A program made the translations under genes and the position numbers. This document shows positions 4,951-39,427 of a stretch of DNA of 45,960 bases, piece after piece; position 1 is the first letter of the stretch, and every line of letters starts with the position of its first letter. Below the pieces are notes generated by a model. The model had not been told where the DNA came from, ran no database searches, and was given only the letters and a program-made list of their open reading frames with translations. Source of the stretch: Pelomyxa schiedti (lineage: Eukaryota > Protista > Evosea); contig JAHLWZ010000924.1 of NCBI GenBank assembly GCA_020536535.1, forward strand, positions 1-45,960, in the 5' to 3' direction.

Positions 4951-7900
4951 TTAGCCACAGAGGACCCAGATTGAAAGGTTCTTGACTTTAAGCATGTGAC
5001 CTCCCCCTCCCCCAACCACACCATACAGTTGCAAGCTCCGAGACGCGGCTTGTTGGAATTTCCTTGTGTATGTGAATGTGGCCCATTCGTGATCAAGAAC
5101 TTTCGGGTGGGCCTGAACCATTGTTGTGACGTCGTTGTCGGAGACTAACTTGAGAAGTACACGGCTTTTCTGGTTGCCCCATCCTTGGTCCGTGGCACTG
5201 AAGCGCATAAAGATACTCAGAATGTGCAGTCCTGGCTTTGAAATGGGATCTGAGAGGGGCACAGGTGTGTCGGTCCTTGTATTGTTTTCCAAAGAAGAGA
5301 GATGTAGAACCTGTTGGAGGGTCTCGGCACTGTGTAGTGGATAATCAGCATTGCTGGAACCCTCAGAGTGTAGCCGAAGAATCACTTGGCTTCCGCTCTT
5401 TCCTTTGGCCTTGAATGTAACAAGTACTTTGCCCCCAAAAACATTCAAAGGCCTGGTTACAGATCCAATAATACCTTGGGTGCCTCCACCAAGGTGCACA
5501 GTGGGAACATGGAGAACAAGAGGGATCCAGCACACCCACGCGCAGAGGTCTGATACACACAACTTTCTGGACTTCGCGTCACAAATACCAAAGACCTGAA
5601 TATCACCAGCAAGTCTGGGAAGTGTCAGGCCAAAAGTGCCAGCTTTCGCTTCCCATTTTAACAAGGGGCTGTCACCAACGCGGAGGAGTACCAGACTGTC
5701 ACCCTCTGCGTGAAATTTCAGCAGTACACTAGAAGCAACACACCCTGGTTTGGAGAGAGAGTCAGTGAGTGGCACTGGTTTACCACTTGATGCATCCCCA
5801 ACACTTGGGTGTGTAATTCTGCTGGCAAGGTCCAGAGTTTCTGCTACCAGAGAAAAGTCTTCAACTACCAGTGGGTGGCCACCTCCGGCCCCAAGCAGCT
5901 GCATTGATTTGCCAAAACCGACATCCAGGAAAGCATTGTACACCTGCCATCCGTGTTCCGGAGTTCCACTGGATTCATTTAGCTTGGTGTCAAGGTGCGA
6001 CGATTTCCCAGCATCGCCAGACCAGATGCGCAAGTAAATGCTCCCTTGGCAGCTTGCTGAGGCTTGCTCTTTGATACGGAAGGAAGTGCTAATCCGACCA
6101 CCAAGTAGATGGCCAGGCTTGAAGACAGCTGGAATGCCAGGCGAGTCTCGCAGGTAGTATCCATTGTCAGGGAGCTAACAACAAAGTCTGGGTCCAACCT
6201 CTTGGTTTTGTTAATTCGTGTGGATTCATTAGGTAACACTAGTTCCGGAGCCTGTTTTGCAGGGGTTTCAACATGTTTGGCGGGAGCCTTGGGGGGGCAC
6301 TCTCTCAAAACAAGTAACTGTCGAGGAAGACAAGGAAGGACTTGATGGCAGAGAAGCCTTCATGTAGAATGTTGAAAAGAAGAGAAAACAAGGAATCTTA
6401 CATGAGATACTACAGCAGAAGGGTGCTCTCGCTCTCTCTTGAATATAGCAGTAAAGTTATTCCAGAGGTATTTGAAAAAATCGGCAAAGAACGCTGTGAT
6501 TTCCTGTACTAAGAACGGGAGAAATGACAATGTGAAGACCAAAGAAATGTACTAACAGTTGATCCGAAAGTCAAATTCAAAGTCTTGATGAAAGAGACTT
6601 CCAACTATGTGAGTAGAAAAAGTAGTGTCCTTGAGACTCGAGGAGTTCAGATTAAGATGGAAGCACAGCTTTCTAATTTGTAACCAGTTGCTAGGATTTA
6701 GGGAATCAAAGAAAGTTGCATATTGTTCCAGTCCGTCAAGTGCCCTCTGTGCACGCAGCAGATTTGCACGTGCCAGTAGAAGGTGGTCTGTAAGATCACC
6801 TGAAAGAAGAGCATCGAAAGCAACTATCGCTTGGTTTCGGCTCTTCTCTCTTTCTGCATACAAGACATCAAGAACTGACTTGGCCAGTTCAAGGTGTTCA
6901 CGTGAGAGTTGCACCAAGGTGAGAGCTTCATCATCAGTCACAGTACTGGACGACTGAGCAGCTCCTTGGTGCGGGCCTGCTGCCATTAATGAGGTAAGAG
7001 TTTGTATGGCCTTGGAGAATCCTTCACTTTGTGGCTTTTCAGTAACCAATTCAAAGGGATCCAAGTTCTGCACTAAACCAAGAAGCACATTGAAATTTAA
7101 GTCCCCACTTAAAAAGATTGTCGTCAATTCCTTGACGCCAGGAATGGAGAAGGCACCAGATACTGCCGCATCAATGAAATTAACAACAGAGTAATAAAGA
7201 GGGCCGCAGAGAGACTGAAGCTCTTGTATAAGTGCTGTGGTTTTGCAGGAATTGCAAACCAGACAGTTCAGTGCCTGGCTGAGCTTTGGTACGGAAGCAA
7301 GCTTCGCTAAGAGTGTGCCAACAAGGTTGGTATAACTCTTCGCTAGGGTGATAATTTTCTTAAGGTACTGTGAACTTGAAAGGCGCAGTAGAGTTTCTTT
7401 GAAACGCATCACAACTACCGCAAGGTGAGGTATATTCTTTCTCTGCAAAGAATGAAGAAGCTCTCCTGTTATTCCGAGGAAAGCCTTAACATGAACATCG
7501 TTGAGTACTTGTGAAAAATTATTGAGGGCAGAATCCTTCAACTTAACAACAAACTGGGACAGTATTAAATCAAGGTTCCGTAAGTCTAAGTGAAGGGTGG
7601 AGTAACAATTGCTAAGCTGTTTTCTAACCACATCTTGCAAATTCAATAATGTCTCTTTTGCTGCAGTCAGATTCTCTGTTGCGGACTTCACTGCAAAGTC
7701 ACGTTTCTGCTGAAGGTCATTCATGGCTTCCCTAAGTTTCTAACATAAAAGTTAGGGCAATCTTATACTGTCATTTTTTTTCGAATGCATACAGTATTTT
7801 CAGCTTCTAACGCATACTTTGCCTGTATTTCCTCTTGCTCAGCTTTATTAAGTGCCTCTTGTGCTCGGCTCCTGTACACTCGGTAGGGAATAACAACTGC

Positions 7901-31477: not shown

Positions 31478-33748
<2,271 letters not shown>

Positions 33749-34079: not shown

Positions 34080-34292
34080 ATGTGCTACGCAGTGAAGTGC
34101 GGCAAGTGCGGCAAAACCACGTGGGCAGGATGCGGAAAGCACGTTGAGTCGGTGATGGCCTCCGTGTGTCTCCAAATGACAAATCGAAACAGACCTAACA
34201 ATCGACTGACACTCGGGCGCTAGGTACCCCCAGAACAACAATGCAAATGTGAGCACCCTGATCCTCAACCTGGTTGGTGCTCCGTCCTTTGA
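34080..34292 (+). CDS. 50-aa Cys/His-rich microprotein (CxxCGKxTWxGCGxH type) with a C-terminal CaaX
   Basis: Exon 1 (34080-34163) MCYAVKCGKCGKTTWAGCGKHVESVMAS; intron gtgtgt..cgctag (34164-34223); exon 2 (34224-34292) VPPEQQCKCEHPDPQPGWCSVL*. Too short for the ORF track. Confidence 0.85.
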
Positions 34293-34395
34293 GCCCAAGA
34301 AAAAAACAAAAGTGTTGTTTTCACTTGTTGTTGGACTCAATAAAATGAAGCCTCAACATGAGGTGGCGCATTTCTTTGTTTCTGTACTCTGTTGT

Positions 34396-37255
34396 TTACA
34401 ATCTATGCTGCAGTTCACTGGTCAGCCAGGATAATCCTTCAAAGAGTCCATCACCTGTAAAGCAACTACAGATTTGACAATACCAAAGTATATGTGATGT
34501 GAGAGCAAGGCGGGAAAGTTGCATGCTTTGAACTAATTTGGGGGCTGGTGTGAAGTGAGGGCGGTCACATTTATTGCCTAACGAGAGATAATTAGCTACA
34601 GTTCCCAACTTATCAACTGGCTTACCAAGAATCAATAGAGGAATTCCACAAATAGATGGCTCCGCCGCTATCTGGAGGGAACCGGAGTTAAATGGAGGAT
34701 ATTGGGGAATTGCACACCCCAAAAAGGGCTTCTTTTGACTCTAGAAATCGTTCAGGGTCAGTGCAGTCAACAACCCAAATAAAGGCATCAGCATTTATAC
34801 AATCTACACAGATTGTAAGAAGAGCGATTTTTTAGTTGGTTTCCTACAGGGTCTCCATAACGGACTTCTCATTCTATTATCTGCTCTCCAGTCAATGGGT
34901 AATTGTGTTGAAGAGAAAATACCTCCACCCACATCCTGGTAGAGTTTAAGAAAGATTTAGAGGCCTAAATTTTTCCATACCCAAACAGTGAAGTTCACAT
35001 TCCTGATGTCTATTATGTCCAAGTCTGTTGTACATCAAAATACAGAACTTCAATTGGCGAGACAGTACTGAAACCGACTGATGGAATAGTGGTACTCATC
35101 TTCTGGAGGCTGATGCAGGATGACAAGGTTGTCTTGCCTGTATGGCATTAACAGCTACAAGGAGGTACAAAATTCTGCCTGCGGCTTCTAAACCACTGAT
35201 GATTATTCTAGTAGGCTTCGAAAACTTGAAGAGGGAAAGTAGGGAAGAGAATGATCTCAAGATCCAATTGAGGAGAGGTGTTGAATCGTCTGTTTTCCTT
35301 GTTCTATTTGCCTCTCTAGAGACTCTATAAGGCCCAAGATTGGAAATTAAGTGCTACCGAGAACAACATGCCTTCTCGGATAGTGTGACTGCATCATCCT
35401 TTTCCAAAGAAAATAGTTTTTTCCAATTGCCTTTGCAGCTGACATCCGAATTAACAAAAACTATCAAGGAAAAAGGAAGATGATACTATGCAGTTAGAGT
35501 AAGATTTGCAAGTTCCAACAAAGATTTCGTTGCTGGATCTCTTTCATATCTATTGAATGCCTCTTTCCACACATCATTGCTGGAGCAAAGAGATTGGAGT
35601 GCACGACAGGTTGCAGTAAACTGGGCAAGTGTTCTGGCATCAAGATAGCCCATTATCTGACTGGGTATTTTGGAAATTTGGGAAGACAGGACGAAGAACG
35701 CACAGGATAAGTTCAAATGGAAGAAGATTGAAGTCTCCTGTATGAAGTGAGTGGTAAAATGGATTTTGCTAATTCACACCAAGAACACCACACTTATTCA
35801 CAGGCAGTATTTTGGGTCTTTGGGAAGCCACAAGACAAGCAGAAGAAGTCCAACCACAAGCAATTTTAAATATTCTCCTCTTATCCAATGCTGGAATAAT
35901 TGTTGGTGTGTTCCTGTTCACAAGGTCGCCAAGGCCTACAATCATTGAGATACCAAATCATATCAACTCTTATCACTGACCAAGTTGACCCTCAGAATTT
36001 GAACCCCAACTGTAAATCGAACCAGATTCTACAACAGCAATAGTGTGTCCTTGTCCGTGAGCCCCTCCGGCAGCAATTTGAATCACACGAGTATCGGCAC
36101 TGAAATTAACCAGAGATGGGGTATTTCTCTGTGTATTGTCACCTGTTCCAAGTTGCCCCGTTTTGTTGTCTCCAAAAGTGTACAATCTCCCTTCCTCAGT
36201 GATCACTGCTGTATGGTTTTCCCCACATGTAACTTTGCAGACTTTCACTTCTGGGGGACAGAAAGACACAAGAACTGGCGTGAGCGATGCCATCTAAGTG
36301 TGTGTCACCCAACCTCAGTGATGAAGGAAATTCAAACCAAATCACCAAGTCCTTGTTGAGAATGACTGGTGCGTCACAAACAAAAGAAAAACACACCGAG
36401 TTGACCAAGACTTCCTGATCCCCAGGTAAATAAATTGCCGGATTTGGAGATCGCTGCACTATGCTTTCCTCCTCCAGAAACTGAAACAATTGCAGATTCA
36501 CCAAACTGGCAGGGTGTAAGTATATCTCTGAAGCAGTAAATAAGAGACAAATTAAGCCATAAAAATAGACCTATCCTCTGTATCATTAACACCCAGTTGG
36601 CCTTCATCATTGGATCCCATTGCATAGGCCCTTCCGGAAAATAAAGCCAATGTATGAAGAGGTCCACATGAACACATATCATACTCTCCATCTATACTAC
36701 TAGTTATTTTTTTGTCAGGATAAGTTGAACAACCCCAAAATGGTGGGCTAACAACTTTTGGACAGATTACTGTAGGTTTTGATGCCGAAATGGCGCCTAA
36801 CTCATTCTGCAAGTTCCAGTATCCCATGAAGCTGGATGAAGCCTCCCAAGTGGTGAGAGCTCCACAACTAATTCTGATAGTTGTAAGAAGCAGTTATACA
36901 GCCCACATTAATCACAGTTTCGATTCTGTGCGTGCAAACGGAAGCCACTGTGGTTGAGTGGTCGAGTGTGTTCCACCCCACACTAATAACTCTCCACTGC
37001 AAACAACGGCCATATGCCTGTAGTGCCATTAATATCGGTGAGAAGGCAAAAACAAAAAAAAAATAGATACATGCCACCACATGCAACATCATCAGGGGTG
37101 AAAGGTAACAAGTAAGGCACAACTTTTGGAACACTTTGTATCCCCTGCATGCAATTAGGAGTAAACATGAATTTCATTTGAATGAAACTGCACAAAAAAG
37201 AAAAACCTCGATGCCTCTTCCCAGTTGACCATTGCTACCACAACCCCATGTCATC
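34396..37255 (-). CDS. RCC1-repeat / F-box / Arf-like GTPase fusion protein (5' end approximate)
   Basis: RCC1 repeats (TWGCGSNGQLG, GSNDEGQLG, SVSGGGKHSAAISKSGNLFTWGSGSLGQLG, VTCGENHTAVITEEGRLYTFGDNKTGQLG). F-box: DFNLLPFELILQIMGYLDARTLAQFTATCRALQSLCSSNDVW. Arf domain: RIIISGLEAAGKTT, IPSVGF, NFTVWDVGG, FIWVVDCTDPERF, LLILGNKCD, TGDGLFEGLSWL. All joined in frame by short introns; stop 34396. Confidence 0.85.
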
Positions 37256-37492
37256 ACCTCCCTGGGTCCGCAACACCCTTGCATCAATCACTCAACTATG
37301 AAAACAAACTCAATGAGCCCTCACACAGTAGACGCGGTTTTTTTGCTGTTTTTTTAATAACTATTGTCACAACGAAACGCCAAAAGGGGAAATTTGATGG
37401 TGTGACCCACCCAAACAACTTTATTCAGTTGCCTCATTTCAGTAGAGGAAGGGGTTATTCACTAGCCCTGTTACATCAAGCCCATTGGATTT

Positions 37493-39235
37493 TCAAGGTT
37501 TGCTGTGGTTGGTGATGGTGTTGTTATTGTTGACATTTTCATTTGTGCTGTTGGTGCTGGTTGTTGCTGGTGTTTGGGGACATACCCTTCGTTTCTTCCT
37601 TTTGGATTTGTTGGTGCACTGGTATATGGGCAAGTGGGTGTGTGTTCCATTGTAGGCAACAACGACTTCATTGCCCCGCCTTTCCACATGCTTCTTTGCA
37701 GTGCACCCACGTGTTGTGCAGCGGTAGTAGCTCCGGGACACCGGTGTGAGAGAGGGTGATTGCTGAGATGTCTTTTTGATTGCCTTTTGACCGTACTTCC
37801 TCCAGCAGTATCCATCATTGGAAGGATTGTAGTTTTCCCATGACAGGTGCCCGTCACTTTCCTCGCCATCTCCTGGTGCTTCAGTCCTGGGAGGCATCAT
37901 AGCTTCTGTGTTTGGTGTAACCTGCCAAACCGGGTCCGCAACCATATTCAGCCCGCCAGTATTTGTAACTGTGCTATTTGTGCAGCTTGGCATGGGGGTG
38001 GGAAGGTATTCAGTATTCTGAGGCACATTACCAGGCACTGGAAAGCCAGAGCAAACACTTTGTAGAACACACGCTGCCATACACGCAGGGGATGCCTCAG
38101 TGCAGAACTGTGGGACATTAGGCGTGGGTATGATTTTTCTGGCTACAAGTTGTGTGTCACTTTCATCGTCACTTTGAACAGATGGTACGGTAGTGTAATT
38201 ATAAAGGTATTCACAGGGTTGAGTTTGGAAGTTGAATGGAGTGTCTGGAGGAACTGACTGTGGTTGCTGGAATTGAACTTGTTCCTGTCGCGGGGCATCA
38301 AGTTCCATCTTTGGGTAAGTCGGCAGGGCAGTTGTTGTGTTGCTGGTATCCTCTGCCATAATCTGCTGTGGCTCTATTTGGTGTGGTTGGTGCCGCTTGT
38401 GTGCCTGGTGTGACTTTGTATGTGGGAATTCCTGTTTCACGTGAGTTTTTTTGCTGTTCCCAACTTGCCGTGGTTTCTCACACGCGACGTTACTGGGTTT
38501 CTGTTGTTGTTGTTGCTGCTGCTGTTGTTGTGGTTGTTGTTGTTGTGGCTGTTGATGGTGATGGTGATGATGTCGATTGTTTCCGCTATTATTAGAATTA
38601 CTATTACTATTAGTGTCAGTTCCGCCGGTCGTGATTGCGGTGTGCCGTGAATATGGAGAAGTTGCAGCTGGATCGTTCGTCGTAGTATTGGTACTAGCAG
38701 CATCAGATGGATTTTGGATATTTCCACTCTGGTTGTAGTCCTCCTCCTCGTCTTCGTCCTCCTCATGAGGAAAAGGCATTCTCTCCACGCCAGTGTGCAT
38801 TTCCTCGGCCCCTTGGTCGCGGGTACCTGCGGCGGTACTAGCAGTCGTAGGCTGGACCGCCGCCGCAGCCGGGGAAACGTAAGGCCCCATGCACGCGGCC
38901 CCGGCCCCGGCCCCGGTCTCGTGGGTGATGGCAGAGAGCACCTTGCCGCGGTCCGGGGGCTGCTGCTGCAGTTGCGGGCCATGGTGGGGGGCAACCGGGG
39001 AGCCGGGGGGCGCGGCATGGACCGGGGCAGGGGGGCCGTGGAGGATCCCGCAGCGGCAGCAACAGGCGCACCCGGTGCACTGCGGGGGGGCCCCGTCGGC
39101 AGGGGGCGGCGCCGCGGGAGGGGCGGACGCGGAGGTGGCCGTGGTCGTAGCCGTGGCCGGGGGGGCGCTGGGGGGTCCGAAGTTCAGTAGACGCGACGCT
39201 ACAGGGCCGGTGCGCCGCTGCTGTGCGTTACCCAT
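37493..39235 (-). CDS. WRKY transcription factor (single C-terminal WRKY domain; long uninterrupted ORF)
   Basis: NDGYCWRKYGQKAIK...RSYYRCTTRGCTAKKHVERRGNEVVVAYNGTHTH (C2H2-type finger). Long low-complexity N-terminus, basic NLS-like KSKRKKRR. Confidence 0.93.
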   Translation of the reverse strand: MGNAQQRRTGPVASRLLNFGPPSAPPATATTTATSASAPPAAPPPADGAPPQCTGCACCCRCGILHGPPAPVHAAPPGSPVAPHHGPQLQQQPPDRGKVLSAITHETGAGAGAACMGPYVSPAAAAVQPTTASTAAGTRDQGAEEMHTGVERMPFPHEEDEDEEEDYNQSGNIQNPSDAASTNTTTNDPAATSPYSRHTAITTGGTDTNSNSNSNNSGNNRHHHHHHQQPQQQQPQQQQQQQQQQKPSNVACEKPRQVGNSKKTHVKQEFPHTKSHQAHKRHQPHQIEPQQIMAEDTSNTTTALPTYPKMELDAPRQEQVQFQQPQSVPPDTPFNFQTQPCEYLYNYTTVPSVQSDDESDTQLVARKIIPTPNVPQFCTEASPACMAACVLQSVCSGFPVPGNVPQNTEYLPTPMPSCTNSTVTNTGGLNMVADPVWQVTPNTEAMMPPRTEAPGDGEESDGHLSWENYNPSNDGYCWRKYGQKAIKKTSQQSPSLTPVSRSYYRCTTRGCTAKKHVERRGNEVVVAYNGTHTHLPIYQCTNKSKRKKRRVCPQTPATTSTNSTNENVNNNNTITNHSKP

Positions 39236-39427
39236 GATCACAAACCCAAAAAAAAAAAAAAACTAAAGTTCAGCTTGGGGAGCCTTTGTTCGCGCCCACT
39301 ACTCATTTCCCGTTGGGAGAAAGGAGACACGGGCCAAAGTGAGAAGAAATGTGGGAGCGGTATTTTTTTTTAACCAGGCTTGGGTATCCCCTTTATACAC
39401 TTACATATACCGCTCCACAACAATAAG

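What the first reader, a model, noticed from the sequence alone, without database searches (positions are those of the whole stretch)
34396..37255. RCC1 propeller + F-box + Arf GTPase in a single polypeptide
Seen: manual splicing runs in frame from the last RCC1 repeat (KIACGWTSSACLV) into an F-box (LLPFELILQIMGYLD) and then into a complete Arf-like domain that keeps an internal amphipathic helix (LLNWILRSFSSLLSLF). Established: F-boxes recruit substrates to SCF ligases through Skp1; RCC1-like domains act as GEFs or substrate and membrane binders; TRIM23/ARD1 is the known animal E3-Arf fusion. Inference: an SCF adaptor with a built-in GTPase switch, perhaps with an intramolecular GEF-like propeller, linking ubiquitination to membrane traffic. 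The F-box lying C-terminal to the propeller is also atypical.
Basis: partly seen in the sequence, partly recalled or inferred. Interest (0 to 1): 0.8.

Follow-up and report, generated by a model that had tools for sequence, protein, structure and literature searches.

The report
RCC1–F-box–Arf fusion gene, known family
The window really does encode one 685-residue amoeba protein that joins an RCC1 propeller, an F-box and an Arf GTPase, but this fusion is already catalogued in related amoebae and has at least 13 annotated sister copies in the same genome, so it is a mis-annotated member of a known but unstudied family.

Summary
Observation confirmed. The window is a whole contig of Pelomyxa schiedti (Archamoebae). 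On its minus strand, 37284..34396, I rebuilt an 18-exon gene of 685 aa with 17 short introns, 16 of 41-62 nt and one of 101 nt. It encodes RCC1-like blades, then an F-box, a conserved linker, an internal amphipathic helix, and a complete Arf domain.

Both apparent stops between the F-box and Arf lie in canonical introns. One TAG is a Tyr codon split as TA|G...C. The Arf exons hold no usable ATG. GenBank splits this locus into three models.

At least 13 paralogs in the same genome are annotated as single RCC1+F-box+Arf proteins. The closest is 54% identical over about 650 aa and has introns at the same positions. The scan's first readers had already noted four other such loci on other pieces of this genome.

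The architecture is listed by Vargova et al. 2021 (supplement) for Mastigamoeba, Acanthamoeba, Thecamonas and Euglena.

RNA confirms six Arf-part introns but does not reach the F-box, and it retains one intron.

New here: every member examined has lost the catalytic Gln (Asp in this copy).

The SCF-adaptor and GTP-switch reading is plausible but untested. Verdict: new member of a known kind, modest interest.

The parts
34396..37284 (-). Whole coding region of the rebuilt gene: 18 exons, 685 aa, 17 introns (16 GT-AG, 1 GC-AG).
   Evidence: Model built. It aligns end to end with paralogs P0002 and P0070 at 53-54% identity over 644-665 positions.
35780..37284 (-). Exons 1-7, the RCC1-like beta-propeller (residues about 10-372). 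Six clear GQLG-type blades and one degenerate blade.
   Evidence: Pfam RCC1, RCC1_2 and WD40_RLD hits on exons 1, 4, 5, 6 and 7. The paralog propeller folds with pLDDT above 90.
35555..35737 (-). F-box (residues about 389-433), split by the 43-nt intron 35703-35661.
   Evidence: Exon 9 alone gives PF12937 F-box-like at 31.9 bits (cut-off 24.3), covering profile positions 11-46 of 47. The leading L-P-x-E-L-I-L is in exon 8.
35439..35486 (-). 48-nt GT-AG intron (i9). Its first G completes the apparent TAG stop at 35488-35486. The spliced codon is TA|C, which encodes Tyr456.
   Evidence: The spliced product '...LTLTAYCKGNWKKLF' aligns without gaps to P0002 '...VASISYCKGNWKKLF'. Paralog locus L001 has the same TA|GTA... 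split at the same place.
35358..35438 (-). Linker exon 10 (CKGNWKKLFSL...ACCS), a family-specific conserved segment between the F-box and Arf.
   Evidence: No Pfam hit, but the GNWK and ACCS motifs are conserved in the paralogs.
35316..35357 (-). 42-nt GT-AG intron (i10), which contains the second apparent stop (TAG 35356-35354).
   Evidence: The spliced 'ACCSREANRTRKT' matches P0002 'ACCSVEARNTVKT'. L001 has an intron at the same position.
35228..35275 (-). Internal amphipathic helix LLNWILRSFSSLLSLF (residues 497-512). It is the counterpart of the Arf N-terminal helix, but it is not at a protein N-terminus.
   Evidence: Hydrophobic moment 0.59, 99.9th percentile within the protein. An equivalent segment is present in all paralogs.
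34396..35250 (-). Arf G domain (residues about 505-685), exons 11-18. Motifs: GLEAAGKT, TTIPSVGF, WDVGGD, NKCD, CSC.
   Evidence: P0001 (the GenBank model of this part) scores PF00025 at 144.3 bits over profile 5-173 of 174. Motifs read.
35138..35178 (-). 41-nt GC-AG intron (i11) that splits the P-loop as GLEAAG|KTT.
   Evidence: The loose end of the RNA contig at 35140 continues at 35182-35196. Acanthamoeba and paralog L001 have an intron at the same position.
35025..35068 (-). 44-nt GT-AG intron (i12) after VGF. It must be removed to keep the frame, but the one RNA contig available retains it.
   Evidence: The RNA piece 35140-34980 is unbroken. The spliced form NLDIIDIRNVNFTVW matches paralog NVEVVEYKNVAWTVW.
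34923..34935 (-). 13-nt micro-exon that encodes DVGG and the first base of Asp571, the residue in place of the catalytic Gln.
   Evidence: The RNA joint 34882/34980 carries 10 letters between its sides. Paralog L001 has an equivalent micro-exon.
34378..35196 (-). Extent of the only RNA evidence, a 553-nt single-cell RNA contig. It is spliced at introns i11 and i13-i17.
   Evidence: tables 5, 7 and 8.

Best explanation
This is one protein-coding gene of Pelomyxa schiedti. It belongs to the amoebozoan family of Arf1-derived multidomain proteins with the order RCC1-like propeller, F-box, conserved linker, amphipathic helix, Arf G domain. The points in this paragraph are shown. GenBank wrongly splits the locus into three models. 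The Arf module keeps every nucleotide-binding motif. It has lost the catalytic glutamine (Asp571 here), and so has every family member examined.

The following is inferred. The F-box docks the protein to Skp1 in an SCF ubiquitin ligase. The propeller is the substrate- or ligand-binding face. The Arf module is a slow-hydrolysing GTP-binding device. Its interswitch toggle would expose the internal amphipathic helix and place or re-orient the ligase on an endomembrane. The protein would thereby couple ubiquitination to membrane traffic.
For: Gene model: the ORF is continuous over 18 exons, with 16 GT-AG and 1 GC-AG introns, 16 of 41-62 nt and one of 101 nt. This matches the species' published intron-rich genome and its 1.59% GC-AG rate (PMC8887013). 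RNA confirms six introns. Exons 10-11 contain no Met before the P-loop. The model is 54% identical to paralogs P0002 and P0070 over the full length. Paralog locus L001 has introns at identical positions.

Family: 13 P. schiedti proteins carry RCC1 + F-box-like + Arf as single annotated genes. Mastigamoeba P0291, Acanthamoeba XP_004334879.1 and a complete Trinity ORF of Luapeleamoeba hula have the same three domains. Vargova et al. [quoted passage not shown]

Domains: Pfam scores are. The catalytic Gln is absent in 18 of 18 members whose G3 motif could be read, replaced by E, P, A, D or G. It is Arg in Euglena EgrArf1h and Glu in MbaArf1e. The helix is amphipathic.
Against: No RNA covers the RCC1 or F-box exons or the F-box-to-Arf junctions at this locus; coverage stops at 35196. 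The one RNA contig retains intron i12, which would truncate the protein after switch I. This copy has the longest branch in its clade (1.01 against 0.19-0.66), a one-residue insertion in switch II, and GLE in place of GLD. Intron i5 (101 nt) is uncertain, and the product there is 4 residues shorter than in the paralogs. Skp1 binding, nucleotide binding and membrane binding are all untested. The AlphaFold model of a paralog gives low confidence for the F-box and linker, and pTM is 0.55.
Confidence: 0.75

Rival explanations
1. The locus holds separate genes, as GenBank annotates it: an RCC1/F-box-fragment gene that ends at a stop, and an independent 211-aa Arf (KAH3744372.1) with its own ATG.
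For: The deposited annotation has three models. The RNA contig covers only the Arf part.
Against: The annotated Arf start (MMQSHYPRR) uses an ATG in another frame plus an ad hoc 56-nt GC-AG intron, and no paralog conserves it. The annotated 188-aa model ends in a retained intron inside the F-box (mapped). The linker exon between them is conserved as coding sequence in paralogs that are annotated as single genes. There is no in-frame Met before the P-loop.
Confidence: 0.04
2. The copy is a decaying or non-productive paralog. It is transcribed, but no full-length functional protein is made.
For: Intron i12 is retained in the only RNA contig, at low depth of about 5. The copy has the longest branch among its close paralogs. 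Several motifs deviate: GLE, NKCD, CSC and a switch II insertion.
Against: All 18 exons are open and all 34 splice sites are canonical. No frameshift or stop is present, and the nucleotide-contact residues are intact. Intron retention is common in SmartSeq2 single-cell data.
Confidence: 0.12
3. This is a functional rival within the fusion reading. The RCC1-like propeller is not a substrate receptor but a built-in nucleotide-release or exchange factor for the Arf module in cis. It would act as HERC1 RLD1 does on ARF proteins, and the F-box would serve to degrade or ubiquitinate the module's partners.
For: RCC1 is the Ran GEF. HERC1 RLD1 is reported to release GDP from ARF proteins, and its RLD2 binds ARF1 (PMC6692442). 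Within the family the RLD and the Arf domain always occur together.
Against: No confident RCC1-Arf interface appears in the paralog model (pTM 0.55, linker pLDDT 31-43). Other F-box-Arf proteins lack any RLD, namely Bodo, Physarum and Acanthamoeba Arf1i/l, so the RLD is not needed for the F-box-Arf pairing.
Confidence: 0.2

Closest known systems
Mastigamoeba balamuthi MbaArf1e/MbaArf1f and Acanthamoeba castellanii AcaArf1g (XP_004334879.1): 'RCC, F-box-like' Arf1 paralogs in Supplementary Table 1 of Vargova et al. 2021, GBE 13:evab157
   Same: The domain order is the same: RCC1 blades, F-box-like, linker, helix, Arf1-type G domain. Homology runs the full length (about 30% identity to the Acanthamoeba-type member P0147; the family profile recovers Mastigamoeba P0291 and Acanthamoeba P0196). 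The catalytic Gln is lost in all. Intron positions are shared with Acanthamoeba at GLDAAG|KTT and W|DVGG.
   Different: Acanthamoeba adds an N-terminal Kelch propeller. Pelomyxa has expanded the family to at least 14 copies. This copy has Asp where Mastigamoeba has Glu and Acanthamoeba has Pro. No member has been studied experimentally.
Euglena gracilis EgrArf1h (TSA GDJR01058384.1) and Thecamonas trahens 'Kelch repeats, RCC, F-box' ARF
   Same: RCC1 repeats are followed by an F-box-like segment and an Arf1 domain in one transcript. The Euglena G3 motif is WDVGGR, so the Gln is lost there too.
   Different: These belong to other eukaryotic supergroups. Common descent versus convergence is unresolved, because the Arf tree has no basal resolution. 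The paper annotates only 'RCC1' for the Euglena protein.
TRIM23/ARD1 (animal RING-B-box-coiled-coil-Arf E3)
   Same: An E3-ligase element and a C-terminal, non-myristoylated Arf domain sit in one chain.
   Different: TRIM23 is itself a RING E3 with a B-box and a coiled coil. Here no exon scanned gave a RING or B-box Pfam hit, and ligase activity would come from SCF through an F-box. TRIM23 has no RCC1 domain. That TRIM23 keeps a working GTPase is from my own knowledge.
HERC1 (HECT E3 with two RCC1-like domains that bind and act on ARF1)
   Same: The same three functions meet: an RLD, an E3 ligase and Arf. HERC1 RLD1 is a GDP-releasing factor for ARFs and RLD2 binds ARF1 (PMC6692442).
   Different: In HERC1 the Arf is a separate protein and the ligase is HECT type. 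Here all three are covalently joined and the ligase link is an F-box.
FBXO24 / yeast Saf1 (F-box proteins with RCC1 repeats) and RhoBTB (GTPase plus Cul3 adaptor)
   Same: These show an F-box combined with RCC1 repeats, or a small GTPase fused to a cullin-adaptor domain. This comparison rests on my own knowledge.
   Different: In FBXO24 and Saf1 the F-box is N-terminal to the repeats and there is no GTPase. RhoBTB uses Rho and BTB rather than Arf and an F-box.

Membership tests
ARF family GTPase (Pfam PF00025) | Match to the Arf profile above the curated cut-off over the whole domain | tested here: met
   P0001, identical to model residues 484-685, scores 144.3 bits against a cut-off of 22.3, over profile 5-173 of 174.
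ARF family GTPase (Pfam PF00025) | Nucleotide-binding motifs G1 GxxxxGK[ST], switch I Thr, G3 DxxG, G4 NKxD | tested here: met
   GLEAAGKT, TTIPSVGF, WDVGG and NKCD are all present. The P-loop splice is confirmed by RNA.
ARF family GTPase (Pfam PF00025) | Catalytic Gln after DVGG (Q71 of Arf1) | tested here: not met
   It is Asp571 here. It is E, P, A, G or R in every family member read. This departs from a catalytic residue, not from the fold.
ARF family GTPase (Pfam PF00025) | N-terminal amphipathic helix, usually myristoylated at Gly2 | tested here: inconclusive
   The helix is present and strongly amphipathic. It is internal, at residues 497-512, so it cannot be N-myristoylated.
F-box protein (SCF substrate receptor) | F-box motif above the Pfam cut-off, with the leading Leu-Pro | tested here: met
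   PF12937 scores 31.9 bits against 24.3 on exon 9 alone, and LPFELIL is supplied by exon 8. Paralog P0100 scores 40.4 bits over profile 2-45 of 47.
F-box protein (SCF substrate receptor) | Binding to Skp1 and assembly into SCF | not testable with these tools
   This needs a pull-down or a co-fold with P. schiedti Skp1.
RCC1-like domain (seven-bladed propeller) | Tandem RCC1 repeats that form a closed propeller | tested here: met
   RCC1 and RCC1_2 hits fall on five exons. Six clear blades and one degenerate blade are seen. Paralog P0100 matches PF25390 at 223 bits and folds as a propeller with pLDDT above 90.
RCC1-like domain (seven-bladed propeller) | Guanine-nucleotide exchange activity | not testable with these tools
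   No assay is available, and the AlphaFold model gave no confident interface.
RCC-F-box-like-Arf1 proteins of Amoebozoa (Vargova et al. 2021, Suppl. Table 1) | Domain order RCC1, F-box, Arf1-type domain in one protein, homologous over the full length | tested here: met
   Alignment with 13 Pelomyxa members and with Mastigamoeba, Acanthamoeba and Luapeleamoeba members. Intron positions are shared.
TRIM23/ARD1 | RING finger, B-boxes and a coiled coil N-terminal to the Arf domain | tested here: not met
   None of the ten exons scanned with Pfam gave a RING or B-box hit, and none appears in the paralogs.
HERC family | C-terminal HECT domain | tested here: not met
   There is no HECT hit. The C-terminus is the Arf domain.

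The most novel reading that the evidence does not exclude
The RCC1-F-box-Arf proteins of Amoebozoa, apusomonads and euglenozoans may descend from one ancient gene. Its Arf module lost the catalytic Gln early and would work as a GAP-insensitive, exchange-controlled membrane latch for an SCF ligase. The attached RCC1-like domain would act as its own nucleotide-release factor. On this reading the family is a covalent 'Rosetta stone' for the RLD-ARF-E3 partnership seen in trans in animal HERC1.
Probability: 0.12. Interest if true: 0.6.

Novelty: new member of a known kind. Interest (0 to 1): 0.3.

Why it matters
The result corrects a GenBank annotation: three models, one of them a spurious 211-aa 'ADP-ribosylation factor 1', are really one 685-aa gene. 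It also shows that Pelomyxa carries a large expansion, at least 14 copies, of a multidomain Arf family that has so far been recorded only in a supplementary table.

Two family-wide traits seen here give concrete handles for a first biochemical study of how a small GTPase can be wired into a cullin-RING ligase. One is the universal loss of the catalytic glutamine. The other is a conserved linker with an internal amphipathic helix. Mastigamoeba balamuthi or Acanthamoeba would be the practical systems.

Tried and rejected
1. My first junction models were wrong: a 48-nt GC-AG intron directly after 'RDP', and a 41-nt intron giving 'SPIEVL|NVNFTVW'. I replaced them after aligning to paralogs.
2. A word-index search with the F-box ORF found nothing. 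An exact look-up of the 106-aa RCC1 ORF also found nothing. This genome's proteins are stored as spliced gene models, not as ORFs.
3. I searched for a mini-exon encoding 'LGDTHLDG' inside the 101-nt intron i5. The frames do not connect, so i5 stays as the least certain intron.
4. The Arf-domain tree does not resolve whether the family is one clade. One origin is neither forced nor excluded. The tree only places this copy firmly inside a Pelomyxa clade (support 98/90).
5. The AlphaFold2 model of paralog P0100 used a 10-sequence alignment. The propeller is confident, but the F-box and linker are poor and pTM is 0.55. Nothing can be said about RCC1-Arf contacts, so I ran no fold search.
6. I looked for a relative in which the F-box and Arf share one exon. 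Acanthamoeba is just as intron-rich.
7. The spliced 685-aa protein itself could not be given to the Pfam, structure or database tools, because it has no reference. I used exon references, P0001 and the paralogs instead.
Full report
**What is there**

The window is the whole contig JAHLWZ010000924.1 of the Pelomyxa schiedti assembly GCA_020536535.1. P. schiedti is a free-living anaerobic archamoeba. Its published genome has 7.43 introns per gene, 98.4% GT-AG and 1.59% GC-AG (PMC8887013).

A three-frame reading of the minus strand between 37300 and 34396 shows coding blocks in a fixed order. RCC1 repeats come first, then an F-box, then an Arf domain. The blocks are separated by very short non-coding stretches.

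**Gene model**

I rebuilt the gene as 18 exons, 37284..34396 on the minus strand, encoding 685 aa. It has 17 introns. Sixteen are 41-62 nt long and one is 101 nt. Sixteen are GT-AG and one is GC-AG.

The first ATG, at 37284, is preceded by an in-frame TGA two codons upstream. About 200 nt separate it from the stop of the upstream WRKY-type ORF. The intergenic distance at paralog locus L001 is the same.

**RNA evidence**

One search for sequencing runs and one read-laying run were available. Three runs hold the stretch completely and without splicing. Their kind is not on record, and they are probably the genomic source.

One single-cell RNA run yields a 553-nt contig covering 35196..34378. It is spliced exactly at six of my introns:
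- 34625-34578
- 34717-34672
- 34847-34804
- 34922-34881
- 34980-34936
- 35178-35138

The fourth and fifth flank a 13-nt micro-exon that encodes DVGG. The last is a GC-AG intron that joins the P-loop as GLEAAG|KTT.

The same contig retains the 44-nt intron 35068-35025, and it does not extend upstream of 35196. So transcription and splicing of the Arf part are shown. The junction to the F-box is not covered by RNA at this locus.

**The F-box to Arf junction**

Two in-frame TAGs appear to separate the F-box from the Arf domain. An HMMER search of 1.84 billion representatives with the last Arf exons returned this locus's own annotated product and two full-length relatives from the same genome:
- P0001 (KAH3744372.1, 211 aa), the annotated product of this locus
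- P0002 (KAH3761505.1, 688 aa)
- P0018 (KAH3744576.1, 738 aa)

P0002 and P0018 carry RCC1, F-box-like and Arf domains in one annotated gene.

Aligning P0002 to my locus fixed both junctions. The first TAG (35488-35486) is TA plus the G of a GTATCA... donor. The 48-nt intron ends at ...GTCAG, and the spliced codon TA|C gives Tyr. The result, '...LTLTAYCKGNWKKLF', matches P0002 '...VASISYCKGNWKKLF' with no gap. The second TAG lies inside a 42-nt GT-AG intron, and the spliced 'ACCSREANRTRKT' matches P0002 'ACCSVEARNTVKT'.

Mapping P0002 back onto its own DNA shows introns at the same positions. These include the same TA|G split, the P-loop intron and the DVGG micro-exon. Acanthamoeba shares the GLDAAG|KTT and W|DVGG intron positions.

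Exons 10 and 11 contain no Met before the P-loop, so a functional Arf cannot be translated on its own.

The GenBank models for this locus are therefore artefacts:
- A 532-aa model merges the upstream ORF with blades 1-4.
- A 188-aa model ends in a retained intron inside the F-box.
- The 211-aa 'Arf1' starts at an out-of-frame ATG joined by an ad hoc 56-nt GC-AG intron.

**Domains**

Pfam on single exons gives:

| Exon | Family | E-value | Notes |
|---|---|---|---|
| 1 | RCC1 | 5e-4 | |
| 4 | RCC1 | 3.7e-6 | |
| 5 | RCC1_2 | 7e-9 | |
| 6 | RCC1 | 2.7e-24 | |
| 7 | RCC1 | 3.5e-5 | |
| 9 | F-box-like | 1.1e-7 | 31.9 bits, cut-off 24.3, profile 11-46 of 47 |

The first ten F-box profile positions are the LLPFELIL of exon 8.

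The whole Arf part (P0001) scores 144 bits over profile 5-173 of 174. Its motifs are GLEAAGKT, TTIPSVGF, WDVGGD, NKCD and CSC.

The segment LLNWILRSFSSLLSLF has a hydrophobic moment of 0.59. That is the 99.9th percentile of all 16-mers in the protein, and 1 of 2000 shuffles reaches it. It sits exactly where Arf1 has its N-terminal helix. It lies at residues 497-512, so it cannot be myristoylated.

**The family**

Searches with the F-box-to-Arf half of P0002 and with a family profile list 13 P. schiedti proteins annotated as single genes with RCC1 + F-box(-like) + Arf: P0002, P0070, P0100, P0103, P0107, P0018, P0115, P0116, P0215, P0227, P0264, P0287 and P0294.

They also list members from other amoebae:
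- Mastigamoeba balamuthi m51a1_g9136 (P0291)
- Acanthamoeba castellanii XP_004334879.1 (P0196, with an added Kelch propeller)
- a complete Trinity ORF of Luapeleamoeba hula (P0117), which shows the three domains on one mRNA in a relative

My model is 54% identical to P0002 and P0070, 48-49% to P0100 and P0103, and 28-30% to the Luapeleamoeba and Acanthamoeba-type members (P0117, P0147, P0181). In an Arf-domain tree it sits inside a supported Pelomyxa clade (98/90), but on the longest branch.

First-stage readers of this scan had already flagged four other loci of this kind on other pieces of the same genome.

**What is known**

Vargova et al. 2021 (GBE 13:evab157, PMC8358228) state that some multidomain ARF family proteins carry BTB or F-box domains. 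[quoted passage not shown] Their Supplementary Table 1 lists:
- 'RCC, F-box-like' for MbaArf1e and MbaArf1f
- 'Kelch repeats, RCC, F-box' for a Thecamonas protein
- 'RCC1' for Euglena EgrArf1h, whose sequence also shows an F-box-like stretch before the Arf domain

The architecture is therefore catalogued, including in the sister genus of Pelomyxa. The main text does not discuss these proteins individually, and it does not mention the catalytic residue.

**A family-wide trait seen here**

None of the members whose G3 motif could be read keeps the catalytic Gln after DVGG. There are 18 such members in the database set, and the published Euglena and Mastigamoeba sequences agree. The replacements are:
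- Glu in most Pelomyxa copies and in Mastigamoeba
- Pro in Acanthamoeba, Luapeleamoeba and the F-box-Arf of Bodo saltans
- Ala or Gly in single copies
- Arg in Euglena
- Asp in this copy

By contrast, most non-family Arf domains in the comparison set have Gln (14 of 22 whose G3 motif was read), including a P. schiedti non-family Arf, P0110. The linker motif GNWK and the helix are also conserved within the family.

**How it most likely works**

This section is inference. The F-box would bind Skp1 and bring the protein into an SCF ligase. The propeller is the obvious substrate or ligand face. The Arf module can bind nucleotide but probably hydrolyses GTP poorly. Its GTP state would release the helix to bind membrane, or would change the geometry between the ligase and the propeller.

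An alternative, suggested by HERC1, is that the propeller acts on the Arf module in cis. In HERC1, RLD1 releases GDP from ARFs and RLD2 binds ARF1 (PMC6692442).

The AlphaFold2 model of paralog P0100 gives a confident propeller. The F-box has pLDDT 50-64, the linker 31-43, and pTM is 0.55. It therefore neither supports nor excludes a fixed RCC1-Arf interface.

**Verdict**

Direct RNA proof across the junction at this locus is still missing.

It is not a new kind of protein. It is a mis-annotated, somewhat divergent member of a family already recorded in Archamoebae and beyond. The modest interest lies in the size of the Pelomyxa expansion and in the universal loss of the catalytic glutamine.

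Noticed in passing
window 37493-39241 (-): A 582-aa ORF with a WRKYGQK motif (WRKY-type DNA-binding domain) and long Gln, His and Asn runs lies directly upstream. The GenBank 532-aa model (window about 39235-36332) appears to fuse it to the first RCC1 blades of the gene studied here.
   Followed up: partly
window 35025-35068 (-): A 44-nt intron is retained in the only RNA contig, while six other introns of the same contig are spliced. Retention would end the frame after switch I. It may be an unprocessed or regulated isoform.
   Followed up: partly
window 34923-34935 (-) and L001 about 5516-5632: A 13-nt micro-exon encodes DVGG, the G3 motif. It is confirmed by RNA here, and an equivalent one is present in the paralog locus.
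   Followed up: yes
L001 4001-4163 (paralog P0002 = KAH3761505.1): The annotated paralog replaces the expected blade segment (SG.LYTWGSGNLGQLG in P0070 and in my model) with 'RLEDL' across a 163-nt gap. An exon was probably missed in that GenBank model too.
   Followed up: partly
window about 33400-33560: A long CAA/poly-Gln trinucleotide repeat reads as poly-Q, poly-N or poly-K in several frames. It lies inside the region of the annotated PIG-S-like gene (window about 31478-33664, minus strand).
   Followed up: no
It is a 207-aa model that runs off the fetched stretch, with Pfam Arf and Ras hits.
   Followed up: no
P0070 (P. schiedti, 1083 aa): This closest paralog carries a roughly 400-aa N-terminal extension before the first RCC1 blade, which the other paralogs lack. 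It may be a real extra domain or another merged gene model.
   Followed up: no
window 34080-34223 (+): A small Cys-rich ORF (CxxC-type spacing, MCYAVKCGKCGKTTWAGCGKH...) lies just downstream of the gene on the opposite strand. It has an obvious intron-like break.
   Followed up: no
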